Part shown: positions 24,801-62,759 of the stretch, one piece after another
Position numbering within the stretch: position 1 is the first letter of the stretch
How the letters are laid out: each line of letters begins with the position of its first letter
Virus record (IMG/VR): IMGVR_UViG_3300019458_000020
Span: 1-64,000 of that record
Direction: 5' to 3' (one strand)
Length of the DNA stretch: 64,000 nt
Translations under genes and position numbers: made by a program
The notes under the pieces: generated by a model
Database searches by the model: none
What the model saw: only the letters and a program-made list of their open reading frames with translations
What the model was told of the DNA's origin: nothing

Positions 24801-25133
24801 TTCGGTTATGGGGCTTCCCATCGACCACAATCCTCTTCCGGGAGGAAGAAATTTCATATTGAACATTCTATCATACATCTCTTGGGCAGATTTTTGAGCC
24901 TTTATTGAATTCCATCCAAGTTTATGTTGTTCAATCCATACCTTTTGCATGTTGAACGTTCCTTCTACTACTCGTTGAATTGTTTCCCACCATCTTTCAT
25001 TATCTCCATTGGCTTTCAAACGGGAGTATGTTCTTAAATAAACTAATGCACCTAGTCCATTGAATCCGAACGGTGGTTTTTGTCTTTTATATTTATCGAG
25101 GAAGCTATCAGTCAGCCGAAATTTACCATTCAT
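21834..25133 (-). CDS. nrdJ: Class II (adenosylcobalamin-dependent, RTPR-type) ribonucleotide reductase, intein-containing
   Basis: RTYSR, PPGRGLW, LNNCAF, GVGVGF, VVAGNVRRTA, GEPG, NP[intein]CLEQSL, TSIKPSGTVS, DNQVSCT, C-terminal CSNDVC. Confidence 0.95.
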   Translation of the reverse strand: MNGKFRLTDSFLDKYKRQKPPFGFNGLGALVYLRTYSRLKANGDNERWWETIQRVVEGTFNMQKVWIEQHKLGWNSIKAQKSAQEMYDRMFNMKFLPPGRGLWSMGSPITEERHLYAALNNCAFVSTSTIKEDVSKSFCFLMDMSMLGVGVGFDCKGSGKIKVGKPSPSPDNIYKIADTREGWVESTKLLIESYLLETKEVHFDYSLIRAAGEPIKGFGGVSSGSQPLIELHKTLRVIFDKNVGHLITTTTIVDVMNLIGKCVVAGNVRRTAEIVFGDYNSEEYLDLKNYKKNPHRSEYGWTSNNSIFCDLGMDYSNAAERTKVNGEPGYAWLENMKGYSRMNNGMDHKDHRVEGGNPCLTGDTLIAVADGRNAVSIKELAEEGNDVAVYSMNKSGMVEIKWGRNPRKTRENAELVEIEFEEGGKLRVTPDHKMILLNGETCRAKDLKIGDSLPRFQKRKEKMFKDNPNKYYIVSMDTNDVKRKREMEHRLIVKFHNPEKWNELYNESKSNGWCKGGIVVHHKDYNGLNNSIDNLELMTFKDHCKFHADHDNQGENNPMFGRQHTEESKKLIGEKTKERCKDVEYLKRLSNSHTDECRELYSSKMKKNKKEWDKEYYIEQSKKTDLETVWVNERMFAKKKCITCNDEMIVSWGSRHVVFCSHSCQNKHEGQIKFRKEGQKIHFENKQRDTLHQQIMIFKDLKQSLDRNPLKKEWERECRNRKISFRIRNPESLKTENPYVLKSYKELIEKEKGYNHRVKSVTFLSEKEDVYNITVDDNYNYSIITQVSDNQVDGIIIINCLEQSLESYELCCLVETFPNNHENLDDFLVTLKYAYLYAKTVTLGQTHWPETNRVMLRNRRIGCSMSGIVQFLANRGIDEFKTWCEKGYKKIEYYDEVYSDWLAIPKSIKKTSIKPSGTVSLVAGATPGVHFPENVCYIRRMRLSKYSDLVGPLKEAGYHIEDCKGSEDTTVVVEIPVKIGDNLRPVKDVSIWEQAALAAFLQRYWADNQVSCTISFRKDEANQIKHLLNFYQYQLKGISFLPITEKGAYEQMPYETISIETYDELSSKLKPVRFKGIKHEEADVERFCSNDVCEIKPKS
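22737..24059 (-). mobile_element. Intein (441 aa) with HNH endonuclease, NUMOD3 and zinc finger
   Basis: Starts CLTGDTLI after GGNP; block B VTPDH; HNH EHRL..VHHKDYNGLNNSIDNL; GENNPMFGRQHTEESK; block F DVYNITV; ends IIIIN before +1 Cys. Confidence 0.93.
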
Positions 25134-26673: not shown

Positions 26674-26892
26674 ACTTTATTCTTTCTATGTTATTGATGT
26701 ACTGTATCATCCGTACCTTTGGTGTAAACTTAAAATAACCTCGGATGATGAGGATATTGATTTGTATTATGTAGAAGTACTTTTTACATAAATGTCCCTG
26801 TAATTTTATTTTGACTTTTTTGTTTTTGATGATACTTATATTATGAAATCGCCTGTAGAGGCGCTCAACAATTAAAAGAAAGAGATAAGATT

Positions 26893-34035: not shown

Positions 34036-34064
34036 ACACTACTTAAAGGGTGAGGTAGTGTCAA
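34036..34064 (-). promoter_or_regulatory. Sigma70-type promoter, probably giving a leaderless transcript
   Basis: TTGACA-17 nt-TAGTGT, then 7 nt to ATG 34028. Confidence 0.7.
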
Positions 34065-40099: not shown

Positions 40100-42481
40100 T
40101 TACGTTATACGAGGATTATTGACCCCATATCCATTCTTAAATTTAGTAGTTCGGTCTGTCTGAGAAGATAACAATTGACTATCCAAGTAAACAACGGAAG
40201 AAATTCCTCCATTCAACATATCTTTTCTCAAAGCACAGATTTCATCGTATATTAATTTAAATGTATCTGGCTGTTCGGATTTGTTGTTTCTTACACCTTC
40301 TGTAGAAGCATTGTTGAATCCTACTGATATATCCCTTAGTTTATCAAATTTTACATCAGGAATAGAATTTATAGCAATAGCCAAATCCTTTAACGCACTT
40401 GTTAAACTGACTACTTGAATTATTGTTCCTGCCAAACTTAAAGATTGAAGGTCTTTGAAACCGTTGACTACAATTTGAAATCCGTTAGCAAAATTTTGTA
40501 TTGCCTTAGATGCAATCCACATTGCTGCTGAAAATGGAATTAATGATGCACCTAATGCTGCAATAGCCAATGCTCCCAATCCTATTAATGGAAGAATTGG
40601 TCCAAGAACTGCGGCACCAATAGCCAATGCAGTTATACCGGCCGCGGCTATAAAGAATGTCTTCCATTCTACTCCATTCATCAATTTCATAGCAAAAGCA
40701 AATGGAATCAATGCAGCACTAAGAGCTAATACACTAAACACACCACGTAATACCGATGGATTCCCCATTGCTTTTAATCCACTAGCAGTTCCTTGTAGGA
40801 ATCCTCCCAATCCTTTACCTATACCGGCACCTATACCAGCAAAGAATTTTCCTAATCCAAAAAATATTGCTGCAAGTCCTCCCACTAAAACTATACCAGC
40901 GGCAATTCCAGCTACCCATTTATTCGTATTTAAGTTTATCCAATTTAGGGTATTAGCTATCCCTCCCAATACAGTATCAATAATAGGAAGAAATATTTCT
41001 GCAACTCTTTGAGTTAGTGCTTTCCATGATTGTTGAATCGATTCAATTCTAGCACTATTGTTTTTTATCATTAACGTATGTTTTTCACTCTTAGCTTCAA
41101 GTTCTGCACGCTTTGCTGTAGCTCGTGTTAGGTCTTCGTAAATTTTAAGTTGTTTTCTTATCTCCGGGTCTGAAGACTGACGTATTTTTTGCATTTCTCT
41201 ATCAGCTTGAAGTATTCTACCAACTTCATCGGCTGATTTACCCAATGCTTCAGCAACGGCACGTTGTTGGAATGGATCTAATTGTTCAAAACTTGTTTCT
41301 TTTGCAATTCGAAGTATTTCAGAATTCAATCCTTTTATATCTTTTCTGTATGCTAACTCTCTCGCAGTTTGTAAATTAATACTTTGTCCAAGTAATACAC
41401 TGGCTTCCATTTCACTTCTTACAGAAGATGTAAAATCAATTAATTTTTCTGCTGAGCTTGCCGCCGAACTTAAACTCGTTCCCAATCTTTTTGCTTCTAC
41501 AGCAGCTTTAGCTATCTCAATTGGGGAACGAGACATGAATGCAAAATGTGATTTCGTTGCACTTGAAATGTCTTTCATTACATCGTCAAGATTGGTTCCA
41601 GCTGCTCTTGATAATCTAGCAGTGAATAACAACATGTTCTCTTGCATCTTGGATGTACTTCCAGCAACGGAAGACATGTTCTTTAAAAATTCGGCAGAAG
41701 ATGCCGATGTGATACCCAATTGTTGACTCATCAACGACATGGTTTCACTTACACTCTTACTGGATACAAGGGTTGTTCCGAACGCATCGGCCATAGCCTG
41801 AACAGATTCATAAACATTTCTAGCAGTCACTCCTACAGCACCGAGGGTAAAGTGTATATCTCTTGTATCCTTATCTATGATTCCAGTAAACTCTCTGGTT
41901 ATACCCATACTTTTTCTGAAATCAGCTGCAGCTTTATCTATTTCATTAAATACATCCAGAATAAATTTAAACAATGAAACCGCTAGGGTTATACCAACTA
42001 AAATTGGTCCACCCTTACTCCACAACCTAGAATACTCAGAGAAAGATTCTTTTAACTTAGAAAACCCTAAAGCATCAGCGACATATCCCCTTGAACGTTC
42101 AGCGGAAAGTTTGGCGTATTCTTGTGACATCGATTTAATCGTGTCTCGATGATCCATTAACGCATTAAGTTGTCTCGTTAATTCATTAGATTCTGCGGCA
42201 GTTAGTGCCCTACCCATTGTTCTTAATTGATGAATTCTTTGGTGGGCTTCCATCGATGCCCTCAATCGTTCCTGAATATTGATTTCAATAGCTGATAATT
42301 TTTGTTGTGTGGTGAGTTGTTCTTCTTGGATGGATTTAATGATACCTTGTTCTACACCATGCATCTTTAAGAACCTACTTTGAATTTCTAAGGAACGTTC
42401 GATATTCTTGAAATTCTGTAATACATTGAGACTGGCATCTTGATAAGCCTCTAATGTTTTTTTGTCTAGGTTTTCCGGCAT
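40100..42481 (-). CDS. Tape measure protein
   Basis: Long Ala/Ser-rich helical protein with Gly/Ala hydrophobic repeats; downstream of the chaperone pair. Confidence 0.8.
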   Translation of the reverse strand: MPENLDKKTLEAYQDASLNVLQNFKNIERSLEIQSRFLKMHGVEQGIIKSIQEEQLTTQQKLSAIEINIQERLRASMEAHQRIHQLRTMGRALTAAESNELTRQLNALMDHRDTIKSMSQEYAKLSAERSRGYVADALGFSKLKESFSEYSRLWSKGGPILVGITLAVSLFKFILDVFNEIDKAAADFRKSMGITREFTGIIDKDTRDIHFTLGAVGVTARNVYESVQAMADAFGTTLVSSKSVSETMSLMSQQLGITSASSAEFLKNMSSVAGSTSKMQENMLLFTARLSRAAGTNLDDVMKDISSATKSHFAFMSRSPIEIAKAAVEAKRLGTSLSSAASSAEKLIDFTSSVRSEMEASVLLGQSINLQTARELAYRKDIKGLNSEILRIAKETSFEQLDPFQQRAVAEALGKSADEVGRILQADREMQKIRQSSDPEIRKQLKIYEDLTRATAKRAELEAKSEKHTLMIKNNSARIESIQQSWKALTQRVAEIFLPIIDTVLGGIANTLNWINLNTNKWVAGIAAGIVLVGGLAAIFFGLGKFFAGIGAGIGKGLGGFLQGTASGLKAMGNPSVLRGVFSVLALSAALIPFAFAMKLMNGVEWKTFFIAAAGITALAIGAAVLGPILPLIGLGALAIAALGASLIPFSAAMWIASKAIQNFANGFQIVVNGFKDLQSLSLAGTIIQVVSLTSALKDLAIAINSIPDVKFDKLRDISVGFNNASTEGVRNNKSEQPDTFKLIYDEICALRKDMLNGGISSVVYLDSQLLSSQTDRTTKFKNGYGVNNPRIT

Positions 42482-46166: not shown

Positions 46167-46658
46167 TTAAAACTGTAGTATGGCGTAGTCGTACGACAAA
46201 GTAAGTGTAATTCCGAGTGGGTCGCCATTGTTCGTCCAGTCTAGGGTCTGGAAATCGGCATTAGTGATGAATGCACCTTTCAATGTCCATTCCTCAACCT
46301 TATCACCGACTGGTCCAAGGACATTTATGGTTATGTCCTTTTTATAGAAATCTTGATATCCATCACGGCCAGTAACCGATTCGTGAGAAAGACGAATCCA
46401 TTCCATTACAGCTTGGGCACCGGATGGAACAACTGGGTCATAAAGTTCAGCAGTAATTTCGTTCCAAATCGTCTTTCCTTTGTAGTATCTTTGAAGGTTG
46501 ATGTGGTCGAGGGCCTTGCGTTCGCTAGTTGGCTTTGGTCGGTCACATTTCTTCAAAATGAACGATGGGATACCATCGACATACATGATGAAACGATTTT
46601 GTGTTTTTGTTTCGAAGGCCGTCCAGAATATCTCATTGGAATTTAGTAAATCTGCCAT
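46167..46658 (-). CDS. Tail tube protein (T4 gp19-like)
   Basis: NRF, RP, GK..W..IT..LYD, VMEW, YKKDI....L...G..VE.W.LKGAF, TL.YDY. Confidence 0.9.
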   Translation of the reverse strand: MADLLNSNEIFWTAFETKTQNRFIMYVDGIPSFILKKCDRPKPTSERKALDHINLQRYYKGKTIWNEITAELYDPVVPSGAQAVMEWIRLSHESVTGRDGYQDFYKKDITINVLGPVGDKVEEWTLKGAFITNADFQTLDWTNNGDPLGITLTLSYDYAILQF

Positions 46659-50365: not shown

Positions 50366-51310
50366 TTATTGAACACCTAAATAGCGTTCTGCATTAGCTA
50401 ATGACTCTTCATGACACGATGGGCAAAGAGTAGAAGATGTACCTGGATTTATTTTCTTTCCACATTTCATACATTTTCCGGTTTTTATAGCCAGTTTAAC
50501 CTTTTCTTGATGGTCATCTTTTTTATCTTCCTGAAGTTCATTATGCATTTTCAGTAATTCATCTGATAGTTTCTTAATCAATTCTAAATCTTGAATCACT
50601 GCTTGTTTACGATGAATACCTACCTGAGCAACACGATTTATATCTTTTATCAAATTAATTTCATGTTTTTCACTGTAACCATGTTCTTGTTCATGATCTT
50701 CGTTAATTATTTCACATAAAATACTAAGAATGTTTTCTTTTAATTTTGATGTAATTTCATCAGGCTTGCTACTAATACCATATTCTTTTCCCTTTGGCTG
50801 GGCACCCCAATAATGTAATTTTCCATGTTCTTCATTAACCGGAATGATATTAAGTTGTGGGTGTTTGGATTGAATTGCATCCATTTTTGTAGGATGTTGT
50901 GTAAATATCATTGCATCCTCTACTGATGGTTCATAACCTTTTTTAGTCAAATATTTACCATCTAATTTTCTTTGAACAATGTAATTCTCTCCACTTATTT
51001 CATTTTCCATTAAACCTAATTCTTTTTTACCATACATGGATGCGTATGCCGATTTTAGATCAACAGGAGAAGGTTTACCATCTATACGAAAATTTTTATT
51101 ATCTAATGGAACGTTATTTCTGACTTCAGGTTTCCCATCAGGCATTTGAACCGTAACGGTTGCTGTCTTTCCATCTTTACTGGGTTCGATGGTTAAAACC
51201 TTAAATGTTTTTGGTTGAAGACCTGTGGTCACGAGGGTTATCTTTGAATAGGTTTGTACACCCTTTGTATCCTTATCACCGCCACTTGTTATTTGAGATG
51301 TAGATATCAT
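50366..51310 (-). CDS. Hypothetical multidomain protein with C-terminal Zn ribbon
   Basis: LME, VNE, LKENILSILCEIINE and LQE sites; CMKC..CPSC. Confidence 0.65.
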   Translation of the reverse strand: MISTSQITSGGDKDTKGVQTYSKITLVTTGLQPKTFKVLTIEPSKDGKTATVTVQMPDGKPEVRNNVPLDNKNFRIDGKPSPVDLKSAYASMYGKKELGLMENEISGENYIVQRKLDGKYLTKKGYEPSVEDAMIFTQHPTKMDAIQSKHPQLNIIPVNEEHGKLHYWGAQPKGKEYGISSKPDEITSKLKENILSILCEIINEDHEQEHGYSEKHEINLIKDINRVAQVGIHRKQAVIQDLELIKKLSDELLKMHNELQEDKKDDHQEKVKLAIKTGKCMKCGKKINPGTSSTLCPSCHEESLANAERYLGVQ

Positions 51311-51810
51311 ACGTATTGACTTAAAATTTTTATTGTTTCTCGGGCAGACTTATGCAATATGCCGGTGCCACCCTTGTTATTCCATTCAGTAATAACGACC
51401 TCTGTATCATCTATAATTATATCTCCAGGCCTCGAATACTCTTGTTTTTTATGTTTGTTTGCAACTAAAATGATGTCCGATTCTCTGAGATTAGGTATAT
51501 TTTTTCTTAACCAACTATGTTTACCTCTATAAACCCCATTATTCCTTTCATTCTCCTTCCCCATAGCACTTAATATTTTAACAATCATGAAGTTAGAATA
51601 AATATAATTCCACATATCCTTGGAATAAGGCAACCATTCTAATTCCGAAAAAAACCTTTCTACCCCATGTTTTCGTATTTGAACCCATATAGGGTCATCA
51701 TCGTTAAAATAATAATTCATTCTTTTTCCGGTAGTTTTTTCTACACCGGAGTCGAAGTCTGCTAAGACTCCATCCATATCGACATAAATAATTTTATTAA
51801 CATCACTCAT
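51307..51810 (-). CDS. HAD-family 5'(3')-deoxyribonucleotidase-like protein
   Basis: YVDMDGVLADF, FF..L, ILSA, K..W, IIIDD, W...GG.GILH. Confidence 0.88.
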   Translation of the reverse strand: MSDVNKIIYVDMDGVLADFDSGVEKTTGKRMNYYFNDDDPIWVQIRKHGVERFFSELEWLPYSKDMWNYIYSNFMIVKILSAMGKENERNNGVYRGKHSWLRKNIPNLRESDIILVANKHKKQEYSRPGDIIIDDTEVVITEWNNKGGTGILHKSARETIKILSQYV

Positions 51811-51813
51811 GAG

Positions 51814-51821
51814 TATAAATA
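51814..51821 (-). promoter_or_regulatory. TATTTATA putative late promoter
   Basis: 3 nt upstream of ATG 51810. Confidence 0.5.
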
Positions 51822-51842
51822 TAAAGAAAGATATATAAGAAA

Positions 51843-51871
51843 TTGACGGAAGTTTTTTTGTTCTGTACTTT
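51843..51871 (+). promoter_or_regulatory. Sigma70-type promoter with no downstream sense ORF
   Basis: TTGACG-17 nt-TACTTT pointing into a GC-rich non-coding element. Confidence 0.5.
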
Positions 51872-51994
51872 AGAGCGTCGAGCGAAACAATGAGCGATAG
51901 CGAAGTGAAGCGACGGGCTCGATAGATACAATAAAGAAATAATTAGTACTGATCTTAAAAGATCAAGAATAAAGTACTTTAAAAGTACAGTACT
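51872..51994. other. Non-coding AGCG-repeat and palindrome element (candidate origin/primosome site or small RNA)
   Basis: Five AGCG in 39 nt; TCGAGC/GCTCGA and CGTCG/CGACG inverted pairs; TGATCTT-AA-AAGATCA; GTACTTT-A-AAAGTAC; three AGTACT. Confidence 0.45.
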
Positions 51995-52197
51995 CAGTAA
52001 GGATGTATCCTCACAGGATTTTTTAAAATCTTACTTCCGATTTGTCGAACAAATGATGGATACTCTTTAGAGTCAATTTCTGTCCATGCGTGGGATGCAC
52101 TCCAGGGTTGTCCGTAGTCATGCCCACTAGAAACATGCGACAGATTTTCGTCATCATATTCTACAAAAACCGGCGTTATATCAGATGATTTTTTCAT
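51994..52197 (-). CDS. Small hypothetical protein
   Basis: 67 aa; late motif upstream. Confidence 0.55.
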   Translation of the reverse strand: MKKSSDITPVFVEYDDENLSHVSSGHDYGQPWSASHAWTEIDSKEYPSFVRQIGSKILKNPVRIHPY

Positions 52198-54898: not shown

Positions 54899-57800
54899 TT
54901 ATGCATTCGGGAAAGACGCACCGCTTGGAAGTACATTAAAATCAAGAACAATGAATTCTGCGGTTCTCGTTGGCTTAATGAAAATCTGACCATAGAGAAT
55001 GTTTCTATCAACAATGTCGGCTGTGTTGTTTTCTTCATCCATTTTAACGAAGAAAGCAAACAAACCAGAACGTTGTTGAACCGATTCCATGTAAGGGTTA
55101 ACAATGCTCAAGAATTTGTTTCTAGTAGCAGCTGTATTTTGTTCAAATACCAAGAATTTCGATGTAGAAGCGATAAACTTCTTCAAGTTAATCAACAATC
55201 TACGAACGTTAATTCTATCCAAAGCAGATGCATCGTTTTGTAGAGTCTTTTGACCCCAAACAACAACACCTTGACCTGGGAAGGCAGCAATTGGATTAAC
55301 CTTACCATCATACAGAGTGTCACGTTCTTCGTGAGTAGTTCTATCAGTTACCTGAATTGCCGTTGGGATACCACCACGGTTCAAACCAGCAGGAGCGAAC
55401 CATTCAGCAGCAACCTTGTCGTTAGCAGCATAAACTGCTGGAAGAACAACAGATGGAGGAACCGTTACAACTTTGTTAGTGTTTGTATCAAGGATTTTAA
55501 CCCAAGGATAATAAGCACCGGCGTAGTTGGTATCGTAAGCGGCAGCGTCAGACACAACTTCATCAATCTGACCGGCTGTTGGATTTCCATCATCAACATA
55601 CAAATCCATGATGAAGAAACAATCTCCACGAGCTTCACACATATCAACAACACGTCCGGTGACGTATGGGTGATGTTGGTGAACAATACCTGGAACCACA
55701 ATTAAGTTAATATCGAATTCATCGGAATTTCCTAAAGCGGTGATTGCTTGGTTATAAGCAACCGAACCAGCAGATGAAACCGTAGTACAATCTAATCCTT
55801 GGGTGTTACCAGGTATAATATCTCCACCCACATTAATTGCTGTGGCTGGTGATTGACCATCGAAACCACCTTGGAAACCAACAATGAATTTACGCATCTT
55901 GACGTAAGTGGATTCGTTAGCAGCATCGAATTCGGATGGTACAACGTTACTTCCACTTAGGAAAGAACCAATACCAACACCACCGATTCTGTAATCGTCA
56001 TCCAAAGCGAACGGAATGTTTCTTCCGATAGAACCGTAAGAACCAAACTCAGGCAATGGAGCAAAATATTCCTTATTATCGTCAGATGAACCAATTCCGG
56101 TTGAAGAAGTTGGATACAATCCAGCGAGTTCTACGTCCGCTCCGGTAGGAGCATCATCAAACGTCACGCCGGACGGATATTTGCCAGGATTTAGACCATA
56201 GACTGAAGCTTTGGTGTACTTCATAGCAGGAATCCAATGTCCAGCGCTAGAATTCATAGGAACTGTTAGAGCTTCGAATCCGTAAGGAATTGCTGTTTCA
56301 GGAAGAACCGAATCAGACATTTCGATACGAATATGTTTGCTGTTGTTGGAATACGTTCCAAATTCAATAATCTTACCCTTGAAATCAATGTAATCATATC
56401 TATCACCAATTCTACGAGCAATAAAGTTTGAAGAATTTGGGTCAAGATTTAAGTTATTGAATTGTTCAAGAACAACCGGACGTTTATCGGTATCACTCCA
56501 CCTTCTCAAAGTAAGAGTGAATGAACCCCAATCACTTCCAGGAACAGTTCCAGCCAATTTTACGTTACTAATTTCAATCTTGAACTGTTTGTTCATGATT
56601 GTTCCATCAGCTAACGTATGAACACGGAACAAACGGAATCTCGTTGGGTCTTGACCGGACTGCCAAGGAGCAATCTTTTGTGATAAGAACCAAGGAGTGA
56701 TAGCGTTAGTAATAGAAAATTCACTGTCTCCATTTGTCAAATCATCACTGAATTCATCGGTGAAGTTGAGTGGATCACCGGTGAATTGAGAAGCGTCTGG
56801 AAGAGCACTTCCAGAAACAAACCACTCGGTTCTATTACCATAAATTTCTGCAATAGCATTATTGAACACTTTATACAAGTAAGCAGCCTCAATTTTTTGA
56901 CCAGTCACTTGTAAGTCAGGGTCACCGACAGCAGCATTTAATCCGAATACATTCGTGATATATTTATTACTGGATGGGTTCAATGAGAATTGATATGTTC
57001 CAATAGTAGTCGAACTGTTACTGTTTTTCAACGTTAAGTTGAAATCGGAAGTGATATCCGAAGCATTAGTGTTTGCACTAGCGGTGATTAGTGAAGAATT
57101 CAAGAATCCCGGAGCAATTAAATCATTTATTCCACCAAACAAGGTATCATTCAATACTGCTAAGACTCTCAAATCCACAGTTGAACCGGATGACCACAAG
57201 TTTGTGCAAGGATCGAATGTTGGTTGACCATTTGGTGTGAAGTTACCATTGTATCTACCAAACGAACCGGATAGAACACCAGCCAATTGAATTGTTGGAG
57301 TTCCACAAGAACCAGTCGAAGTATAGAACGAACCACTGATTAGGTGAATAGATAAGAACGGAGCCGCACCACCGTTGTTGAAATTCAACGTCACATCATT
57401 AGCGAAAGAACCTGAAAATGTTCCGGCTGCAATTGAAGCAGAAATACTTGAACCAGTGTACCATGAGGCCGAAGGAGACGTTAATGTAGTAAAGCCCAAA
57501 CTAATGGTTTGTCCAGAATACAATACAGAACCACTTTGAGACGTTTTTGATAATAATGCGTTGTCCGCTGCTTGAGATTGGAACGTTACTGTTACCGATG
57601 CTGAATTCATCGTTAATATATTTGATGAGATGGAAACGCTTTGACTAAATTGTGCTCCGATAGAACCAGATAGAGTAATAAATGAACTACCTGATATTAA
57701 AGCACCAGCAGAACCGTGACGATTCCAAGTTCCTTTTACTGCCCAAAGAACAAATGGGTAATTTTGTTTATATCCAGTCAAACCACCTACACGACACACC

Positions 57801-58069
57801 GTTACAAGACCACGTTCTTTAAGGTATTCAGCGGCAGTATAAGGACCGTAATATACACCATCCGGAACACCGAATTGAGCTTGAAGTTCATTAATATCGG
57901 TAATTAGCTTAGGTGAAAATGCCGGACCTTTTGCGAATGGTGCCACAACAACGGCACCAATGTCAGCAACACCTTGTGCAATACCTGATTGGTCATTCTC
58001 ACGGGTAAATACACCAGGACTCACTATTCTGTCAACTGGACTAAATCTTCCACCTTCTTGGATCGGCAT
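54899..58069 (-). CDS. Contractile tail sheath protein (T4 gp18-like)
   Basis: SPGVFTREND, YYPWV, WFAPAGLNRG, LY...VNPI..FPG.G..VWGQKTL, RINVRRLL, FEQN, I.IKP.RTAEFI. Confidence 0.96.
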   Translation of the reverse strand: MPIQEGGRFSPVDRIVSPGVFTRENDQSGIAQGVADIGAVVVAPFAKGPAFSPKLITDINELQAQFGVPDGVYYGPYTAAEYLKERGLVTVCRVGGLTGYKQNYPFVLWAVKGTWNRHGSAGALISGSSFITLSGSIGAQFSQSVSISSNILTMNSASVTVTFQSQAADNALLSKTSQSGSVLYSGQTISLGFTTLTSPSASWYTGSSISASIAAGTFSGSFANDVTLNFNNGGAAPFLSIHLISGSFYTSTGSCGTPTIQLAGVLSGSFGRYNGNFTPNGQPTFDPCTNLWSSGSTVDLRVLAVLNDTLFGGINDLIAPGFLNSSLITASANTNASDITSDFNLTLKNSNSSTTIGTYQFSLNPSSNKYITNVFGLNAAVGDPDLQVTGQKIEAAYLYKVFNNAIAEIYGNRTEWFVSGSALPDASQFTGDPLNFTDEFSDDLTNGDSEFSITNAITPWFLSQKIAPWQSGQDPTRFRLFRVHTLADGTIMNKQFKIEISNVKLAGTVPGSDWGSFTLTLRRWSDTDKRPVVLEQFNNLNLDPNSSNFIARRIGDRYDYIDFKGKIIEFGTYSNNSKHIRIEMSDSVLPETAIPYGFEALTVPMNSSAGHWIPAMKYTKASVYGLNPGKYPSGVTFDDAPTGADVELAGLYPTSSTGIGSSDDNKEYFAPLPEFGSYGSIGRNIPFALDDDYRIGGVGIGSFLSGSNVVPSEFDAANESTYVKMRKFIVGFQGGFDGQSPATAINVGGDIIPGNTQGLDCTTVSSAGSVAYNQAITALGNSDEFDINLIVVPGIVHQHHPYVTGRVVDMCEARGDCFFIMDLYVDDGNPTAGQIDEVVSDAAAYDTNYAGAYYPWVKILDTNTNKVVTVPPSVVLPAVYAANDKVAAEWFAPAGLNRGGIPTAIQVTDRTTHEERDTLYDGKVNPIAAFPGQGVVVWGQKTLQNDASALDRINVRRLLINLKKFIASTSKFLVFEQNTAATRNKFLSIVNPYMESVQQRSGLFAFFVKMDEENNTADIVDRNILYGQIFIKPTRTAEFIVLDFNVLPSGASFPNA

Positions 58070-58162: not shown

Positions 58163-58747
58163 TTAATTTATATATTTTCTCCACCCTTTATATTGACGAT
58201 ATCTACCCTTATTCACTCCATACATTCCACCCTCATTTAACTTATTTTCCCTACAAAATGATTTTAAATTACGAATTGAAACGACTTCACCAGAAGTAGA
58301 TATAAATCTATGGATTTTTGATTTGGAGTCGGACATTTTCTTCTTGGTTTCCGACGAAAGTTTTTTACCATAACTGGGATTTTTATTTCCCGTTCTTAAC
58401 CTCGATAACAATTTTTTGGTTTTTTTCGACAACCTACGACCCCTAGGGGAAGGTGGTTTGGATGATAAAAAATTAAAATTATAGTATTTCTGTGGTTCCA
58501 CCGAAGCATTAGTTAGATAGAACTGTTCGATTAAAAGCAGAAATGGTTCAAAACACGTTTCTATTACCTTAAATTCAAAATTCTCTTCACCGTGTTTATT
58601 CCATGCGTTTTGAAGATAGGGGTTTTCGTGTATCCCCTTTTTTAACTTCCACCTATGTTTGTAAAACCTTACATCCGTGTTATTCGAAGACCCAACATAT
58701 ATCTTACCGTCAATTCGGTTTACTATATAATAAATCCCACACATCAT
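58163..58747 (-). CDS. GIY-YIG homing endonuclease with NUMOD3
   Basis: CGIYYI.N....KIYVGSS....R...H, H.N..LQNAW.K.G..NF, EQ.Y, YN; GNKNPSYGKKLS.ETKKKMS. Confidence 0.9.
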   Translation of the reverse strand: MMCGIYYIVNRIDGKIYVGSSNNTDVRFYKHRWKLKKGIHENPYLQNAWNKHGEENFEFKVIETCFEPFLLLIEQFYLTNASVEPQKYYNFNFLSSKPPSPRGRRLSKKTKKLLSRLRTGNKNPSYGKKLSSETKKKMSDSKSKIHRFISTSGEVVSIRNLKSFCRENKLNEGGMYGVNKGRYRQYKGWRKYIN

Positions 58748-59060: not shown

Positions 59061-62000
59061 TTATCTCAATCGAATATATTTAATCGAAGTTAAACTACTT
59101 GATACGACACCACGAGCAGCTGTTACATTTCTCGCAAAAATAGAAGCACTCACGGAACCCGTAACTGTCGTAACATTAGATAAATAGAAATAAACCTTAG
59201 CATTGGTAGCAGGTACATTAGCCATAGGTTCGACGGTTATATCTATATTATTTGTTGTATTTCTTAATTTGGCCCTTACTTCATCTCCTGACGTAGTACC
59301 AACAATTTGAACCATAGCTGTTACCTCGTATGTTCCGGCACCAGGTAATAGAACATCTGTATCACCTTGACCAAAATCCACACGAGCAGAAGTTTGCGTC
59401 AAAGAATAATTCGTTCCAGACCCAGTTACACTACTACATGTAATCAAAGAACAATAAGATGCCGAACCAACAATAGGCCCTTCAAAATAATTTGTATTAT
59501 CTGTTCCTAATTGATATACACCAAACTGCCCCGCGGCGTTAGAAGCAGAAGTTCTATTGATATAAACACCGTATGAAGCAGAATGTGCAACATTTGTTTC
59601 TACAAAAAATCCTGAAGCACTTACGATTGTACCCCTAGAACCAACATTTCTAATTATTGAATTAAACCCTTTTGCATTTATTATTGTACTACTAAATGGA
59701 TTGTTAGTAATAAATCCCTGCATGTTTGTTTGATAACCTACTGAACTTGTTACTGAACAAGACTGATTCAACGTCATTACGGAATTTGCTCCATACACTA
59801 TTGGGAATACTCTTGTTGTTCCTGTTAATGTAGTAAATAAACTTAATGCAGTAATATCACTAGTGATATCTACTGTGTTTTGCAATCCTACCGTGCAACC
59901 TATTTGTGCTCCTATTGCATCTGTATAACTTCCCGTTGTTCCGTTTGTTGATGTATCAGTTTCTACAAGAATGGTTCTAGGAAACGAGGATTGGGAATTC
60001 CTCATAGTAACCTGAAAGAATGTGCTTGGATTTAAAGTACCTAGAGAAATTCTTCCCGTTGATGAAATAGACATCCATCTGTTTTGATTAGCCACAAATG
60101 TTAACAAATTATTGTCTAAAGTTCCCATTGTAGCAGCCGCACCAAAAGAATTCCCGCCTTGTAAAAACGCATTGGAATCTGGTGTCAACTTACTAGCACT
60201 AATAGAATAAGATGATGTAACAGAATTATTTGACCAACTAGATGTTCCGAATAATGTTCCGGTGATTGGACCACGGAAAAAATTATGATCTGAGGTACCC
60301 TCTTGCCATATTCCATACGTGGAAGAAGCGGTTGCTGGATTTAAAAATATCCCGTATGCAGTATCATTTGCTTCATTAAATTGAACAAATAAACCTACAC
60401 TATTACTTACGTAGTTAGCAAATTTTCTACCATCAACATAATAATGATAAAGATTTCCCAGGCTTCCGCTGCCTATAAAATTAGTTTGAGCTGAAAATCC
60501 ATGAGCCGTAGTTGCACTACCAGTGTTTTGAATTTGTGTTATACCCTGTACACCTATCATTAAACTGGCACTCTGATTCCCCTGTATATTAGACCTAGCA
60601 TCTATAGCCGTAGCATACTGTGACGGAGCTGCATTATTTGAAATAGTAGAAACAATAGCGGCACCAACAAATCGTGTACCGTGAGAGTTGGGAGCAACGG
60701 TTATACTCATTCCTTGAGAAAATCCTGAACTTCCCGTTCTAGCATTAGATATACTAACGGCATCAATAGATGCGGTATCTACTTTAGAAACATAAAGGTT
60801 GGCAACAGGATTTGCACCTATACCTACCCATCCAGAACCAGTAGGTTGTATCGTAACCGCTGTGGTATTATTTACCTCTAATTGAAGTGCATTATTATCA
60901 TTCGTTCCTAAAATACCGGCGGCACCAAAAGAATTACCATCCTGAATAAAGGCATTGGAATCTGATGTTAATTTACTAGAGGATACTGCGTATGATGCAC
61001 TAACTGCATTACTAGATGTTCCAAATAAGGATGCTGTAGCATTACCGTTTAAAAAGCTAGAACTTATTGAATTATTTGACCACGAAGATGTAATTTGATA
61101 TGTCGAACCTGTAAACAGTGTAGTTCCCCCCTCACTACTAGGAGAAGATAAGGCAAACGATGCAGTTAAAGCATAAGAAGAACTCACTGCATTACTAGCA
61201 GTACCAAACAATGAAGCAGTGGCATTACCATTCAAGAAGCTGGAGCTTATTGAATTATTAGCCCATGAGGATGTAATTTGATAAGTCGAACCAGTAAATA
61301 ACGTGGTTCCGCCGCCGGCACTCGGTGATGTCAAAGCAAATGAAGCTGTAAGAGAATATGATGAACTAACTGCATTACTTGACGTACCAAATATTGACGC
61401 AGTGGCATTACCATTCAAGAAGCTGGAGCTTATTGAATTTCTCGAATTATTTGCCCAAGAAGCCGTTCCCTCCAAACTTCCACTTTGTCTTACAAATACA
61501 CCCGTTCCTACTCCTGTATATTCTGCTGATGTTAAATGATAATACTCATTAACCTGTCCACCCTGTAGATTAGATAATGCATTGTGATCCGATGCTGGGG
61601 ACGGAGTAAATAAAGTAACAAATGTAGAATCTATTTCTGTTGCTGATGATGCTCCATTTGCTACTATTATTCTTCCTATTAATATAGACAGTCCGGTTTG
61701 TGGAGATAATACATTAGGTAGATTAGCTGGCGGCTGCGACGCCACAGCCTGAAACAAAAGGTAATTACCTGTACCTAATACAACGTAGGTATCCCCACTA
61801 GAAACAGACCTATAAACGAAATTCACCGCATACCTAGTGCCGAAACCGGACAAACTAACTAAATTTGTTCCATCATCATATTGAGTATTGTTGTATTGTG
61901 TAGTTAAAGAACTTGTCCACTCTCCCCCAACATGAAAAAAGAATCGATATGGTGTAGTAAATGTATTTGTAGAAGCGATATCAATCGATGTCGCTCCATA

Positions 62001-62759
62001 CCACACTGTTCCTGATGTGGCTGTTATATATCGGGAACCACTTTCCCCGAGTGCTAATCCAGTTTCCCAAGCAAATCTCCATGTTCGGATGAATCGTTTA
62101 TTGAGCTTATTTCCCATTCCGAATGCCAAATCATCAATGGTAATATATTCAAAAGAATTATAAATAGTTCTATTTATAGTTGCAACGGTAATGATATTTG
62201 TTCCTGTAATTCCTGCTCGATTATCCAGTATATCAAATCGGGGATTGCCGCTATTATAGTCCGCAACTATAAAATAGGTACTTCCTGTCATTGATGCGCT
62301 TAGGGATGCACTCTGAAGGAAATAATTCTTTAGAGTTCCATTCGCTGTAGGTGTGTCAAACAACTGAGCGGAAGCAGAAGATACTAAAATGATGTTACCT
62401 GTTAATTCAAGAGTTGGTTGGTTAGTTAATCCTGCATTAATCAATAATACCGGTCCAGGAATAATGTGAGAAGATGATAATGCATACGATGCCGACAACG
62501 ACGTAGGTGAAAACGTAGAGTATGATGATGAAATAGATAAACTTGATGTCGTGGAGAAACTAGATGATACAGAAATTAAAGTATTACTTGAAGTACCAAA
62601 AAGAGACGATGTTATAGATGTAGCATAAATATTTCTCCAATTTAGAGAAGAAGAACCAAAGTCAAAAGCATTATTAACCGTTGGTATCAAAGATCCCGAA
62701 CGGTTTAATACGTTCCTTTGTAAATTATCTCTATAAGATGCTGTATTTACATTCGACAT
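59061..62759 (-). CDS. Tail fibre/spike-like Ser/Thr-rich repeat protein
   Basis: SSSY/ASFA/SSWA repeats, HN.L.NLQGG...YYHLT motif, duplicated GNSFGAA modules. Confidence 0.75.
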   Translation of the reverse strand: MSNVNTASYRDNLQRNVLNRSGSLIPTVNNAFDFGSSSLNWRNIYATSITSSLFGTSSNTLISVSSSFSTTSSLSISSSYSTFSPTSLSASYALSSSHIIPGPVLLINAGLTNQPTLELTGNIILVSSASAQLFDTPTANGTLKNYFLQSASLSASMTGSTYFIVADYNSGNPRFDILDNRAGITGTNIITVATINRTIYNSFEYITIDDLAFGMGNKLNKRFIRTWRFAWETGLALGESGSRYITATSGTVWYGATSIDIASTNTFTTPYRFFFHVGGEWTSSLTTQYNNTQYDDGTNLVSLSGFGTRYAVNFVYRSVSSGDTYVVLGTGNYLLFQAVASQPPANLPNVLSPQTGLSILIGRIIVANGASSATEIDSTFVTLFTPSPASDHNALSNLQGGQVNEYYHLTSAEYTGVGTGVFVRQSGSLEGTASWANNSRNSISSSFLNGNATASIFGTSSNAVSSSYSLTASFALTSPSAGGGTTLFTGSTYQITSSWANNSISSSFLNGNATASLFGTASNAVSSSYALTASFALSSPSSEGGTTLFTGSTYQITSSWSNNSISSSFLNGNATASLFGTSSNAVSASYAVSSSKLTSDSNAFIQDGNSFGAAGILGTNDNNALQLEVNNTTAVTIQPTGSGWVGIGANPVANLYVSKVDTASIDAVSISNARTGSSGFSQGMSITVAPNSHGTRFVGAAIVSTISNNAAPSQYATAIDARSNIQGNQSASLMIGVQGITQIQNTGSATTAHGFSAQTNFIGSGSLGNLYHYYVDGRKFANYVSNSVGLFVQFNEANDTAYGIFLNPATASSTYGIWQEGTSDHNFFRGPITGTLFGTSSWSNNSVTSSYSISASKLTPDSNAFLQGGNSFGAAATMGTLDNNLLTFVANQNRWMSISSTGRISLGTLNPSTFFQVTMRNSQSSFPRTILVETDTSTNGTTGSYTDAIGAQIGCTVGLQNTVDITSDITALSLFTTLTGTTRVFPIVYGANSVMTLNQSCSVTSSVGYQTNMQGFITNNPFSSTIINAKGFNSIIRNVGSRGTIVSASGFFVETNVAHSASYGVYINRTSASNAAGQFGVYQLGTDNTNYFEGPIVGSASYCSLITCSSVTGSGTNYSLTQTSARVDFGQGDTDVLLPGAGTYEVTAMVQIVGTTSGDEVRAKLRNTTNNIDITVEPMANVPATNAKVYFYLSNVTTVTGSVSASIFARNVTAARGVVSSSLTSIKYIRLR
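60990..61440 (-). repeat. 183-nt (61-aa) tandem repeat, about 2.5 copies
   Basis: 41 nt identical at 61216-61256 and 61399-61439; a synonymously diverged copy at 61033-61073. Confidence 0.9.

What the first reader, a model, noticed from the sequence alone, without database searches (positions are those of the whole stretch)
51843..51994. Promoter + AGCG-repeat hairpin + stacked palindromes: candidate origin or small RNA
Seen: a TTGACG-17-TACTTT promoter on the strand opposite the flanking genes. It leads into a GC-rich purine-biased 50-mer with five AGCG (51874, 51881, 51893, 51899, 51909) and two alternative pairings. Then come an A-rich spacer, two 7-bp inverted repeats and three AGTACT. 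Two GATC occur here although the genome avoids GATC. Established: GAGCG/GAAGCG-rich hairpins typify primosome assembly and single-strand initiation sites, and T4 origins are promoter-primed R-loops. Inference: a transcription-primed origin or packaging site; alternatively a structured sRNA.
Basis: partly seen in the sequence, partly recalled or inferred. Interest (0 to 1): 0.65.

Follow-up and report, generated by a model that had tools for sequence, protein, structure and literature searches.

The report
Orphan early promoter with GTAC array
Between two late genes of an uncultivated T4-related giant phage lies a conserved host-type early promoter that points backwards into about 120 bases of non-coding DNA packed with GTAC palindromes; its job is unknown, and a transcription-started replication origin is the best guess, held with low confidence.

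Summary
The window is the first 64 kb of a 250.8-kb contig of a T4-related jumbo phage. The finding fills the 183-bp spacer between a 67-aa gene and a 5'-deoxynucleotidase (NT5C) gene, both on the minus strand.

- **Promoter:** TTGACG-17-TACTTT belongs to the phage's own early promoter class (37 intergenic sites). It is the only intergenic match on the plus strand in the first 200 kb, it points against its neighbours, and no conserved ORF follows it. All 21 distinct related phage sequences show a matching -35 in the same place. About 16 also have a clear -10, and weaker -35 boxes go with better -10 boxes.
- **GTAC cluster:** this is the other family-wide feature, at 20-48 per kb in the nine spacers measured against 0-2.4 per kb in the flanking DNA.
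- **AGCGA core:** it is conserved only in the four closest sequences, at the level of the best-conserved coding DNA.
- **RNA structure:** no Rfam match, no covariation and no folding signal.
- **GATC pair:** incidental.
- **AT-rich palindromes:** they also read as weak minus-strand terminators.

Function is open. My estimates are a T4-like transcription-activated origin at about 0.3, an unstructured early RNA at about 0.25, and an operator array at about 0.18. No expression data could be obtained.

The parts
51307..51810 (-). NT5C-type 5'(3')-deoxyribonucleotidase gene (167 aa). The element always lies directly upstream of this gene.
   Evidence: Pfam PF06941 at 3.4e-9; PHROG 2643. In L032 an HNH-like gene separates the 67-aa gene from the element, but the element stays next to NT5C.
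51813..51822 (-). Late-type promoter motif atATTTATAc for the NT5C gene, ending 3 nt before its ATG.
   Evidence: The motif is 7.5- to 9-fold enriched upstream of genes. It precedes the sheath, tube-like and 793-aa genes and the 67-aa gene. It is present before NT5C in all relatives. Other late promoters do not carry GTCAA upstream (3 of 30, at other positions).
51843..51871 (+). Early promoter of the host sigma-70 type, TTGACG-17-TACTTT, pointing against the flanking genes. The predicted start is near 51877-51879.
   Evidence: It fits the class of 37 intergenic TTGAC[AG]-N16-18-TAnnn[TG] sites, which are 4.5-fold enriched over coding DNA. The same -10, TACTTT, occurs at the early promoter at 215902. 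All 21 distinct related sequences show a matching -35 30-53 nt from the NT5C ATG, with a variable spacer sequence and a fixed 16-17 nt spacer length. TTGCCA pairs with TATAAT or TATACT.
51872..51921 (+). GC-rich, purine-rich core with five (R)AGCGA units, closed by a GAGC/GCTC clamp. It is the first transcribed segment.
   Evidence: Three-way identity with L006 and L021 is 0.75-0.88. Typical coding windows score 0.3-0.6 and the best reach 0.92. It is near-identical in L014. Differences fall in the linkers and the units are kept. L021 has an inserted block with extra RACGA units. There is no conserved ORF: 11 aa here, 6 aa in L006, and a 2-nt indel in L014.
51922..51993 (.). AT-rich (78%) segment carrying four of the five GTAC sites (51946, 51974, 51985, 51990) and the palindromes. 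The fifth GTAC (51865) overlaps the -10.
   Evidence: It is among the 0.65% least stable 72-bp windows of the genome. GTAC density is 20-48 per kb in the nine spacers measured, against 0-2.4 per kb in the flanking DNA. The further loci mostly hold 2-7 GTAC (L048 only 1). The flanks are symmetric, WGTACW.
51950..51965 (-). Palindrome TGATCTTAAAAGATCA. On the minus strand it forms a -5.6 kcal/mol hairpin followed by a U-rich tail, a weak intrinsic terminator for the upstream late gene.
   Evidence: Relatives have a hairpin with a T-rich tail of different sequence at this place: AGTTAT/ATAACT in L006 and GGATAT/ATATC in L021.
51970..51993 (-). Perfect 12-bp palindrome TAAAGTACTTTA and the GTACTTT/AAAGTAC hairpin (-4.1 kcal/mol, then UUUAUUCUU), directly after the stop codon of the 67-aa gene.
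   Evidence: Four of the genome's 18 GTACTTT/AAAGTAC heptamers lie in this spacer.
51860..51871 (.). Left arm of the 12-nt inverted repeat, whose right arm is 51982-51993. It overlaps the -10 hexamer.
   Evidence: I2, 92% complementary. WIN has CTGTACTTT/AAAGTACAG and L006 has TTGTACTTT/AAAGTACAA, one compensatory change. L021 keeps only 8 bp.
51994..52197 (-). 67-aa acidic protein of unknown function, conserved upstream neighbour.
   Evidence: No Pfam or PHROG hit. Alignment A2 has 21 invariant columns. It has its own late-type motif.

Best explanation
**Shown.** The spacer holds three things.
1. Weak AT-rich hairpin terminators that end the upstream late gene on the minus strand.
2. The late-type promoter (atATTTATA) of the NT5C gene.
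3. Back-to-back with that promoter, an orphan early promoter of the host sigma-70 type. It fires on the plus strand into about 120 bp of noncoding DNA.

That transcribed stretch begins with a purine-rich AGCGA-repeat core, which is specific to the closest relatives. It then runs into a very AT-rich segment carrying an array of GTAC-centred palindromes, which is present across the family.

**Inferred.** The unit acts in cis on DNA as a transcription-activated replication origin of the T4 ori(34)/ori(uvsY) kind. Before replication starts, host RNA polymerase would fire here. The purine-rich transcript would stay hybridised to its pyrimidine-rich template. The adjoining AT-rich palindromic segment would melt like a DNA unwinding element, and the RNA would prime the leading strand. 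The palindromic WGTACW repeats would serve as iteron-like sites for a dimeric DNA-binding protein. One of them overlaps the -10 and start site, so the same protein could also shut the promoter off later.

The stated confidence refers to the origin reading. That this is a real, conserved, noncoding early-promoter unit I put at about 0.75.
For: **Promoter class and conservation.**
- Class membership and uniqueness.
- Conservation in the 21 distinct related sequences, with a fixed spacer length, a variable spacer sequence and -35/-10 compensation.
- The TTGAC box is not part of the late-promoter architecture.

**Noncoding.** No conserved ORF.

**Timing logic.** Late promoters are off when an early promoter fires, so interference with its late neighbours is an unlikely purpose. 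What then matters is the act of transcription or the RNA itself.

**T4 precedent.** The phage is T4-related, with a gp19-like tube protein and a DnaB-like helicase. According to PMC3016281, the minimal T4 oriF/oriG is about 100 bp holding a pre-replicative promoter plus an A+T-rich unwinding element. The same review says T4 oriE carries direct repeats.

**Composition.** The core is 70% purine and 58% GC. The next 72 bp are among the 0.65% least stable windows in the genome.

**GTAC array points to double-stranded DNA recognition.**
- The motif is palindromic with symmetric flanks.
- Repeat units are lineage-specific and copy number varies from 1 to 13.
- GTAC overlaps or abuts the -10 or start site in most relatives.
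- The cluster persists even though GTAC is selected against in the rest of the genome.

**Other points.**
- The element is unique in the 250 kb held.
- No classical iteron array was found elsewhere in that 250 kb.
- Skew at four-fold sites in co-oriented genes changes sign across the element.
Against:
- Whole-strand GC skew simply follows gene orientation, with no inflection at 51.9 kb.
- The shift in four-fold-site skew is about two standard errors, and shifts of similar size occur elsewhere.
- In T4 the unwinding element follows the promoter directly and needs no specific sequence. Here the first 50 nt are GC-rich and strongly conserved in sequence.
- The G-rich, purine-rich character is not shared by the more distant subfamilies.
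- MotA, AsiA, gp59 and the T4 RNase H C-domain were not detected in the 74% of the genome held.
- The repeats are short (7-12 bp), irregularly spaced, and share only a 4-bp core, unlike classical iterons.
- The element lies in a variable insert between the sheath and tube genes. Microcystis phage Mel-JY01, the cultured phage (listed with a named host) whose sheath matched best, lacks that insert.
Confidence: 0.3

Rival explanations
1. An unstructured early small RNA acting in trans. The promoter would make an RNA of roughly 110-150 nt whose repeated motifs (AGCGA, GUAC) bind and titrate a host or phage protein, or pair with a host mRNA, during takeover.
For: - The promoter is conserved and no ORF follows it.
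- Other early promoters of this phage drive RNA genes, for example tRNA-Ser at 160.3 kb and tRNA-Gln at 207.3 kb.
- Repeat motifs with variable copy number and fast-changing flanks are what protein-sponge RNAs such as CsrB look like (from general knowledge).
- The plus strand of the spacer has the purine excess typical of transcribed strands here.
- The core is conserved in sequence without any structure.
Against: - There is no plus-strand terminator. The hairpins carry their U-tails on the minus strand.
- No Rfam family matches.
- There is no covariation and no consistent folding signal.
- No target in the phage genome scores better than shuffled controls do.
- The only motif shared across the family is a palindromic tetramer with symmetric flanks. 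That is expected for double-stranded DNA recognition, not for a single-stranded RNA motif.
- No seed-like conserved stretch spans the three subfamilies.
Confidence: 0.25
2. A regulatory protein-binding array. The GTAC palindromes would be operators for a phage or host dimeric regulator that controls the back-to-back promoter pair. Such a regulator could shut off the early promoter, or set the timing and level of the NT5C late promoter. The antisense transcript would be a by-product.
For: - A GTAC half-site (GTACTTTA) overlaps the -10. A perfect 12-bp palindrome, TAAAGTACTTTA, lies about 100 bp downstream, a geometry that would allow looping.
- GTAC lies at or next to the -10 or start site in most relatives.
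- The unit stays with the NT5C upstream region when a gene is inserted.
- A similar AAGTACTT palindrome sits in the divergent spacer next to the helicase gene, at 26776.
Against: - No candidate regulator was identified.
- This reading does not explain why an orphan promoter should be kept at all, nor the conserved AGCGA core.
- Thirty other late promoters manage without such an array.
- Site spacing is irregular, from 4 to 101 bp.
Confidence: 0.18
3. A packaging (pac) or other DNA-processing site. The cluster of WGTACW hexamers would be recognised and cut, perhaps depending on methylation state, as at the phage P1 pac site.
For: - A cluster of short palindromic sites sits in about 150 bp of a genome that otherwise avoids them.
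- P1 needs Dam methylation of GATC at its pac site (PMC12707154).
- Several metagenome contigs break at or next to the array: L014, L033, L042.
Against: - The large terminase gene is at about 110 kb, 58 kb away.
- T4-type terminases package by headful without a defined pac site (general knowledge).
- No DNA methyltransferase domain was found in the 250 kb held.
- A pac site does not need a conserved promoter.
- Repeat-number variation, as in L006, explains contig breaks equally well.
Confidence: 0.05
4. An ordinary spacer. It would consist of terminators for the upstream gene and the NT5C promoter, with a chance or relic promoter left over from a lost early-gene cassette (like the PeSL elements of T4-type phages) and no function of its own.
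For: - The palindromes do behave as weak minus-strand terminators.
- The locus lies in a variable insert between the sheath and tube genes that contains a homing endonuclease. That is the setting in which PeSL promoter-terminator composites are found (PMC4122927).
- A single promoter match has about a 5% chance of occurring.
Against: - A matching -35 and the GTAC cluster are kept across the 21 distinct related sequences, whose flanking proteins are only 48-72% identical. The -35 and -10 changes compensate for each other.
- The core is as conserved as the best coding segments.
- The spacer keeps a length of 127-201 nt (272 with the L006 microsatellite) in genomes that are otherwise tightly packed.
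Confidence: 0.1

Closest known systems
Phage T4 origins oriF/ori(uvsY) and oriG/ori(34), which are R-loop origins (PMC3016281)
   Same: A pre-replicative promoter recognised by host RNA polymerase, a transcript with no coding role needed for origin function, an A+T-rich and easily melted segment downstream, a total size of about 100-150 bp, and a T4-type phage.
   Different: - The promoter here is of the early sigma-70 class with a -35 box, not MotA-dependent middle-mode. No MotA or AsiA was found.
- Fifty GC-rich, sequence-conserved nucleotides lie between the promoter and the AT-rich part.
- There is a GTAC palindrome array, which has no T4 counterpart.
- The element is conserved across a deep family, whereas T4 origins share no motifs.
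- Origin activity is untested.
Clusters of a methylatable palindromic tetramer at E. coli oriC, P1 oriR and P1 pac (GATC clusters). oriC and oriR are recalled from memory; P1 pac is stated in PMC12707154.
   Same: A local pile-up of one 4-bp palindrome, tens per kb, inside an AT-rich control region of 150-250 bp. In one relative (L006) it takes the form of heptamer repeats.
   Different: The tetramer is GTAC, not GATC. No DNA methyltransferase was found in the phage DNA held. No SeqA-like or pacase-like partner is known. This is a resemblance only.
PeSL (promoter-early stem-loop) composites of T4-type phages (PMC2839356, PMC4122927)
   Same: A sigma-70-like early promoter combined with stem-loops in a spacer of a variable region of a T4-type genome.
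   Different: PeSLs occur in many copies, point the same way as the genes they flank, and have the stem-loop upstream of the promoter. This element is single-copy and antisense, has its stem-loops downstream, and is conserved by position across the family.
Lambda OOP-type convergent antisense RNA (from memory)
   Same: A short noncoding transcript from a constitutive host-type promoter, running towards the 3' end of a convergent gene.
   Different: There is no terminator hairpin on the RNA strand. In L032 and L033 a different gene lies in the path, so the antisense partner is not conserved.

Membership tests
T4 oriF/oriG-type R-loop origin | A promoter that is active before replication | tested here: met
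   It fits the phage's early sigma-70-like class and is conserved. It is not the MotA type; MotA and AsiA were not found.
T4 oriF/oriG-type R-loop origin | An A+T-rich DNA unwinding element just downstream of the promoter | tested here: inconclusive
   51922-51993 is 78% AT and among the 0.65% least stable windows. However, it starts about 50 nt after the -10, behind a segment of 58% GC.
T4 oriF/oriG-type R-loop origin | A persistent RNA:DNA hybrid used as primer, and autonomous replication of a plasmid carrying the element | not testable with these tools
   This needs an infected host.
T4 oriF/oriG-type R-loop origin | A shift in strand composition or transcription direction at the site (seen at some T4 origins, not all) | tested here: inconclusive
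   Bulk GC skew shows no inflection. GC skew at four-fold sites goes from -0.10 on the left to +0.05 on the right, but comparable shifts occur elsewhere.
Iteron-type origin (lambda, P1, plasmids, T4 oriE) | Several evenly spaced direct repeats of 12-22 bp that bind an initiator | tested here: not met
   The repeat units are 7-12 bp, spacings run from 4 to 101 bp, and only the GTAC core is shared across the family. No initiator gene was identified.
Primosome assembly site / single-strand initiation site | Conserved stable hairpins with the recalled AAGCGG-type hexamer | tested here: not met
   GAAGCGA becomes GTAGCGA in L006 and L021. Only a 4-bp GAGC/GCUC clamp is invariant and there is no covariation. 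The consensus itself is recalled from memory.
Structured small RNA (any Rfam family) | A match to a covariance model, or a conserved structure supported by covariation | tested here: not met
   No match at gathering thresholds. The best E-values were 2.2 and 8.4. RNAalifold gives 10 pairs, 9 of them invariant. Folding z-scores centre near zero on both strands; only L026 stands out.
tRNA or tRNA-like gene | A cloverleaf detected by ARAGORN or the Rfam tRNA model | tested here: not met
   None in the window. The phage's 41 tRNA genes lie at 160-225 kb.
PeSL promoter-terminator cassette | Many copies, co-oriented with the flanked genes, stem-loop upstream of the promoter | tested here: not met
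   Single copy, antisense, with the stem-loops downstream. The definition is taken from PMC4122927.
P1-type pac site | A site cluster in or next to the terminase genes, with a cognate methyltransferase | tested here: not met
   The large terminase gene is at 110.4-111.0 kb. There are no hits to PF01555, PF00145 or PF02086 in the 250 kb held. Absence is not conclusive, because 26% of the genome is not held.
Intrinsic terminator of the upstream late gene | A hairpin followed by a U-run on the gene's strand | tested here: met
   Minus-strand hairpins of -4.1 and -5.6 kcal/mol are followed by UUUAUUCUU and by a U-rich tail. They are too weak and too GC-poor for the standard scan. Relatives have hairpins of different sequence at the same place.
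RNA anti-CRISPR / solitary CRISPR repeat | Sequence identity to a CRISPR repeat present in arrays elsewhere | tested here: not met
   Scans with the core pattern found only phage relatives and chance hits in metagenome, viral and genome collections. No spaced arrays were found.

The most novel reading that the evidence does not exclude
A family of T4-related jumbo phages marks one replication start site with a cluster of GTAC palindromes placed behind an orphan early promoter. This would be a GTAC counterpart of the GATC logic of oriC, P1 oriR and P1 pac. Host or phage GTAC methylation, or a GTAC-binding protein, together with early transcription or an R-loop, would decide when the site fires. 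The cluster would be kept even though GTAC is purged from the rest of the genome.
Probability: 0.1. Interest if true: 0.75.

Novelty: new variant of a known kind. Interest (0 to 1): 0.45.

Why it matters
Replication origins and early noncoding transcripts are essentially unmapped in uncultivated jumbo phages. Even among T4 relatives, origins share no motifs that allow prediction (PMC3016281).

This module has a compact signature that can be searched for:
- a late promoter;
- a back-to-back antisense early promoter;
- a GTAC array.

The signature is conserved across a whole family known only from metagenomes. If the module is an origin, it gives a first handle on how these 340-kb genomes start replication, and a small fragment to test in plasmid assays. 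If it is an RNA, it is an early takeover RNA of a new type.

Either way, the local concentration of a tetramer that is purged from the rest of the genome shows a functional constraint strong enough to override the selection that purges it, presumably restriction avoidance.

Tried and rejected
**RNA gene tests**
- Rfam at gathering and at permissive thresholds, and ARAGORN: nothing.
- RNAalifold on the four close sequences: no covariation.
- Folding z-scores for ten relatives on both strands: no consistent signal.
- RNA-RNA duplex scan of the core against all gene starts of the phage: shuffled cores score as well or better.

**Coding test**
- The small ORF starting at ATG 51890 is 11 aa here and 6 aa in L006. 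The frame is broken in L014, and L021 has a long unrelated frame. Rejected.

**Copies elsewhere**
- Other copies in the same genome: none. The other GTAC and AGCG clusters are unrelated.
- The core in viral, metagenome and prokaryote collections: only phage relatives plus chance hits (L015, L016, L019, L020, L030). There are therefore no CRISPR-like arrays and no host copy.

**Specific motif leads**
- MotA-box lead (TGCTTTC/TGCTTTA in one subfamily): no MotA or AsiA found.
- NtcA (GTA-N8-TAC) and cyanobacterial LexA-box leads, both consensus sequences recalled from memory: the GTAC spacings (4-101 bp, often 5, 7, 9 or 11) do not fit. Only one LexA-like match was seen, in L029.
- TGTCAA as part of the late promoter: rejected, since 27 of 30 other late promoters lack it.
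- Directional (RNA-like) asymmetry of the GTAC flanks: not significant (31 against 19, p = 0.12).

**Mechanism leads**
- Methylation control: no DNA methyltransferase domains found.
- OOP-like antisense control of the 67-aa gene: rejected, because L032 and L033 have another gene in that position.
- Rho-utilisation reading of the C-rich minus strand: considered, but composition alone would not hold 24 nt identical.
- Distant NT5C-carrying phages (29% identity; L008, L010, L011): no such element.
- Classical tandem iterons elsewhere in the 250 kb: none.

**Not possible**
I did not pursue reads by any other route.
Full report
**1. Setting**

The window is the first 64 kb of a 250,813-bp IMG/VR phage contig. 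The contig is 35.8% GC and is estimated to be 74% complete. The same phage occurs as a 340,880-bp metagenome contig.

The phage is a distant member of the T4 type.
- Its 1056-aa tail sheath matches Microcystis phage Mel-JY01 best (43%), then Flavobacterium phage immuto (48% over the C-terminal part), then classical T4-like phages.
- It has a gp19-like tail tube protein and a DnaB-like helicase.

The finding fills the 183-bp spacer 51811-51993. On one side is a 67-aa ORF of unknown function (51994-52197). On the other is an NT5C-type 5'(3')-deoxyribonucleotidase gene (51307-51810). Both are on the minus strand.

The locus lies in a block of accessory genes inserted between the sheath and tube genes. 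These include a 459-aa protein, a NUDIX hydrolase, a 213-aa protein, the 67-aa protein, NT5C and a nucleotidyltransferase. Mel-JY01 lacks this block.

**2.

All motifs are at the stated coordinates.
- AGTACT occurs 14 times in the genome, and three of those are here.
- GTAC is strongly depleted genome-wide: 207 seen against 570 expected (Markov) or 821 (base composition). This stretch holds five in 150 bp, the densest in the genome.
- The 50-mer 51872-51921 is 70% purine and 58% GC. Only 0.02% of windows reach both values.
- The following 72 bp are 78% AT and among the 0.65% least stable windows.
- GATC avoidance is real. However, the two GATC here are the arms of one palindrome and are absent from most relatives.

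**3. Two promoter classes, and where this promoter fits**

Upstream of genes, two motifs are enriched 7- to 10-fold: CTTGACA and (AT)ATTTATA.

*The early class.*
- The full pattern TTGAC[AG]-N16-18-TAnnn[TG] occurs 37 times in 28.6 kb of intergenic DNA and 64 times in 222 kb of coding DNA.
- Most sites lie at 200-232 kb, in front of small genes.
- The ATG often sits exactly 6 nt after the -10, which implies leaderless mRNAs. Some sites drive tRNA genes.
- I take this to be the early class, read by host RNA polymerase.

*The late class.* ATATTTATA precedes the sheath, tube-like and 793-aa genes, the 67-aa gene and NT5C, so I take it to be late.

*The promoter at 51843.*
- It fits the early class. 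The same -10, TACTTT, occurs at the early promoter at 215902, and it has the A-rich stretch upstream of the -35.
- It is the only intergenic match to this class on the plus strand in the first 200 kb, and it points against its neighbours.
- No ORF of 30 aa or more follows it.
- Its TTGAC box is not part of the late-promoter design. Only 3 of 30 other late promoters have GTCAA nearby, and at other positions.

**4. Relatives**

Protein-guided and pattern-guided searches gave 21 further distinct sequences of the homologous spacer, 22 with the window. The flanking proteins are 48-72% identical to those of the window.

*Features found across the relatives.*
- The late motif lies 2-19 nt before the NT5C ATG.
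- All show a matching -35 box on the opposite strand, 30-53 nt from that ATG.
- The spacer between the boxes is 16-17 nt and variable in sequence.
- About 16 have a clear TAnnnT -10. Four have an imperfect one (L035, L046, L048 and the L045/L047 pair).

*Promoter variants.*
- TTGAC(A/G)-16/17-TACTTT
- TTGACA-16-TACTCT
- TTGACA-17-TACTTG
- TTGACA-16-TATGAT
- TTGACA-16-TACTAT
- TTGCCA-16-TATAAT
- TTGCCA-16-TATACT

The weaker -35 boxes go with better -10 boxes. This is the pattern of a working sigma-70-type promoter, not of a relic.

*The GTAC cluster.* Density is 20-48 per kb in the nine spacers measured against 0-2.4 per kb in the flanking DNA. The further loci mostly hold 2-7 GTAC, and L048 only one. 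One GTAC usually overlaps or abuts the -10 or the start site.

*Lineage-specific repeat units around GTAC.*
- AAAGTAC(T/A) in the window
- (AGTACTC) about 11 times in L006
- GCTTAGTACA four times in L025
- GTACAAAG four times in L035
- AGTATAAGTAC-like in L044
- (T/A)GTACCT in L028

The flanks are symmetric overall, WGTACW. AGTAC/GTACT occur 33 and 39 times, and TGTAC/GTACA 37 and 28 times. There is no significant strand bias (p = 0.12).

*What the element travels with.* In L032 and L033 an HNH-like gene has been inserted between the 67-aa gene and the element, and the element stays with NT5C. Phages with only distant NT5C homologues lack the element.

**5. The AGCGA core**

The core is shared only by the window, L006, L014 and L021.
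- Three-way identity is 0.75-0.88. Typical coding windows score 0.3-0.6 and the best reach 0.92.
- Substitutions and indels fall between the (R)AGCGA units.
- L021 carries an inserted block (12 alignment columns) that adds RACGA units.
- The ORF from ATG 51890 is not conserved.
- RNAalifold finds only an invariant GAGC/GCUC clamp.

Two other subfamilies have different sequences after the start site:
- GGWAATACC...GTGAAGCTAAG
- GTACTGCTTTC...

**6. What the palindromes do on the gene strand**

On the minus strand there are two hairpins, each followed by U-rich tails:
- GUACUUUUAAAGUAC, at -4.1 kcal/mol;
- UGAUCUUUUAAGAUCA, at -5.6 kcal/mol.

Relatives have hairpins with T-rich tails of different sequence at the same place. 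They are plausibly weak terminators of the upstream late gene.

That cannot be the whole story. GTAC is not generally found behind genes: most of the 18 GTACTTT/AAAGTAC heptamers in the genome lie inside genes, and four are in this spacer. The array also persists when the upstream gene is replaced.

**7. Tests of function**

*RNA-gene tests were negative.*
- No Rfam or tRNA match.
- No covariation.
- Folding z-scores centre near zero on both strands, and only L026 stands out.
- No plus-strand terminator.
- No target in the phage genome better than shuffled controls.

*Origin tests were inconclusive.*
- Bulk skew follows gene orientation.
- GC skew at four-fold sites of co-oriented genes changes from -0.10 on the left to +0.05 on the right of the element, but similar changes occur elsewhere.
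- MotA, AsiA, gp59 and the T4 RNase H C-domain were not found in the 74% of the genome held.

*Packaging looks unlikely.*
- The terminase gene is 58 kb away.
- No DNA methyltransferase was found.

**8. Interpretation**

*Shown.* This is a conserved, single-copy, noncoding unit. An orphan early promoter sits back-to-back with a late promoter. It transcribes or opens a short stretch that is rich in palindromic GTAC repeats. In the closest relatives the stretch begins with a sequence-conserved purine-rich core.

*Inferred.*
- The family-wide motif is a palindrome with symmetric flanks. It sits on the promoter itself, and it is kept against genome-wide selection. Recognition is therefore more likely at the level of double-stranded DNA than of RNA.
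- An early promoter cannot interfere with late neighbours that are silent when it fires. What matters is then the early act of transcription or its product.

The known system that best fits this set of features is the T4 oriF/oriG design: a pre-replicative promoter plus an A+T-rich unwinding element, with the transcript forming an R-loop that primes synthesis (PMC3016281). Here that design is combined with iteron-like repeats.

| Reading | Estimate |
|---|---|
| Transcription-activated origin | about 0.3 |
| Unstructured early RNA or protein sponge | about 0.25 |
| Operator array for the promoter pair | about 0.18 |
| Functionless relic | about 0.1 |
| Pac or processing site | about 0.05 |

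The remainder is left for something not considered here.

**9. Known families**

The element passes the composition-level features of a T4 R-loop origin only in part. It fails the tests for each of the following (see the membership table):
- iteron origins;
- primosome assembly sites;
- Rfam RNAs;
- PeSL cassettes (PMC4122927);
- a P1-type pac site (PMC12707154);
- an OOP-like antisense RNA.

It is best described as a new variant of a promoter-led noncoding control element in T4-type phages, with its function unproven.

Noticed in passing
G000 200-232 kb (outside the window); in the window, the minus-strand promoters at 34064 and 15368: Early sigma-70-like promoters often place the ATG exactly 6 nt after the -10 hexamer (11 of 37 sites; a further 11 lie within 10 nt). 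This implies leaderless early mRNAs. No Shine-Dalgarno-like k-mer is enriched upstream of genes.
   Followed up: partly
window 54899-58069, 46167-46658, 40100-42481 and about 30 other genes: A late-type promoter motif, atATTTATA, lies 2-45 nt before the ATG. It is the reverse complement of the T4 late box TATAAATA (T4 box recalled from memory), yet here it lies on the sense strand.
   Followed up: partly
G000 160,230-224,528: There are 41 tRNA genes, including a tRNA with anticodon CUA (amber-suppressor-like), and a tmRNA gene at 197,242-197,649.
   Followed up: no
window 21834-25133 (-): A class II ribonucleotide reductase alpha chain is interrupted by an intein carrying HNH and NUMOD3 endonuclease domains.
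   Followed up: no
window 58163-58747 (-): A GIY-YIG/NUMOD3 homing endonuclease gene lies directly upstream of the tail sheath gene.
   Followed up: no
G000 232,122-232,690: Two early promoters stand back-to-back (232161 minus, 232167 plus). The plus one is followed by about 480 nt with no convincing ORF (the best frame is a 36-aa GTG frame starting 66 nt after the -10), and by a canonical terminator (CCAGGG-N7-CCCTGG plus a T-run) that itself carries three GTACTTT. There is no Rfam match.
   Followed up: partly
G000 200,572-201,037: A 466-bp gene-free gap lies behind the early promoter at 201028 (minus strand). It contains GC-rich, apparently structured sequence and is a candidate unknown RNA. 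There is no Rfam match.
   Followed up: partly
window 60991-61439, inside gene 59061-62759: A 183-bp tandem repeat of 2.5 copies at 79% match lies within a 1232-aa ORF.
   Followed up: no
L006 2735-2812; L032 1433-1849: The homologous spacer of one relative carries an (AGTACTC) microsatellite of about 11 copies. Another relative has an HNH-like 138-aa gene inserted between the 67-aa gene and the element.
   Followed up: yes
L014 start, L042 end, L033 end: Three metagenome contigs break inside or within a few tens of bases of the GTAC array. This could reflect strain-level variation in repeat number or physical DNA ends.
   Followed up: no
window 26700-26781 and 25254: A second small group of three GTAC sites includes an AAGTACTT palindrome. 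It lies in the divergent spacer next to the DnaB-like helicase gene. A further AGTACT lies 2 nt past that gene's stop codon.
   Followed up: partly
whole genome G000: Several 4-bp palindromes are under-represented. Observed over Markov-expected ratios are GATC 0.20, GTAC 0.36, CTAG 0.65 and GCGC 0.68, while TCGA and CCGG are not depleted. GTAC depletion differs among the relatives, from 0 to 2.4 per kb.
   Followed up: partly
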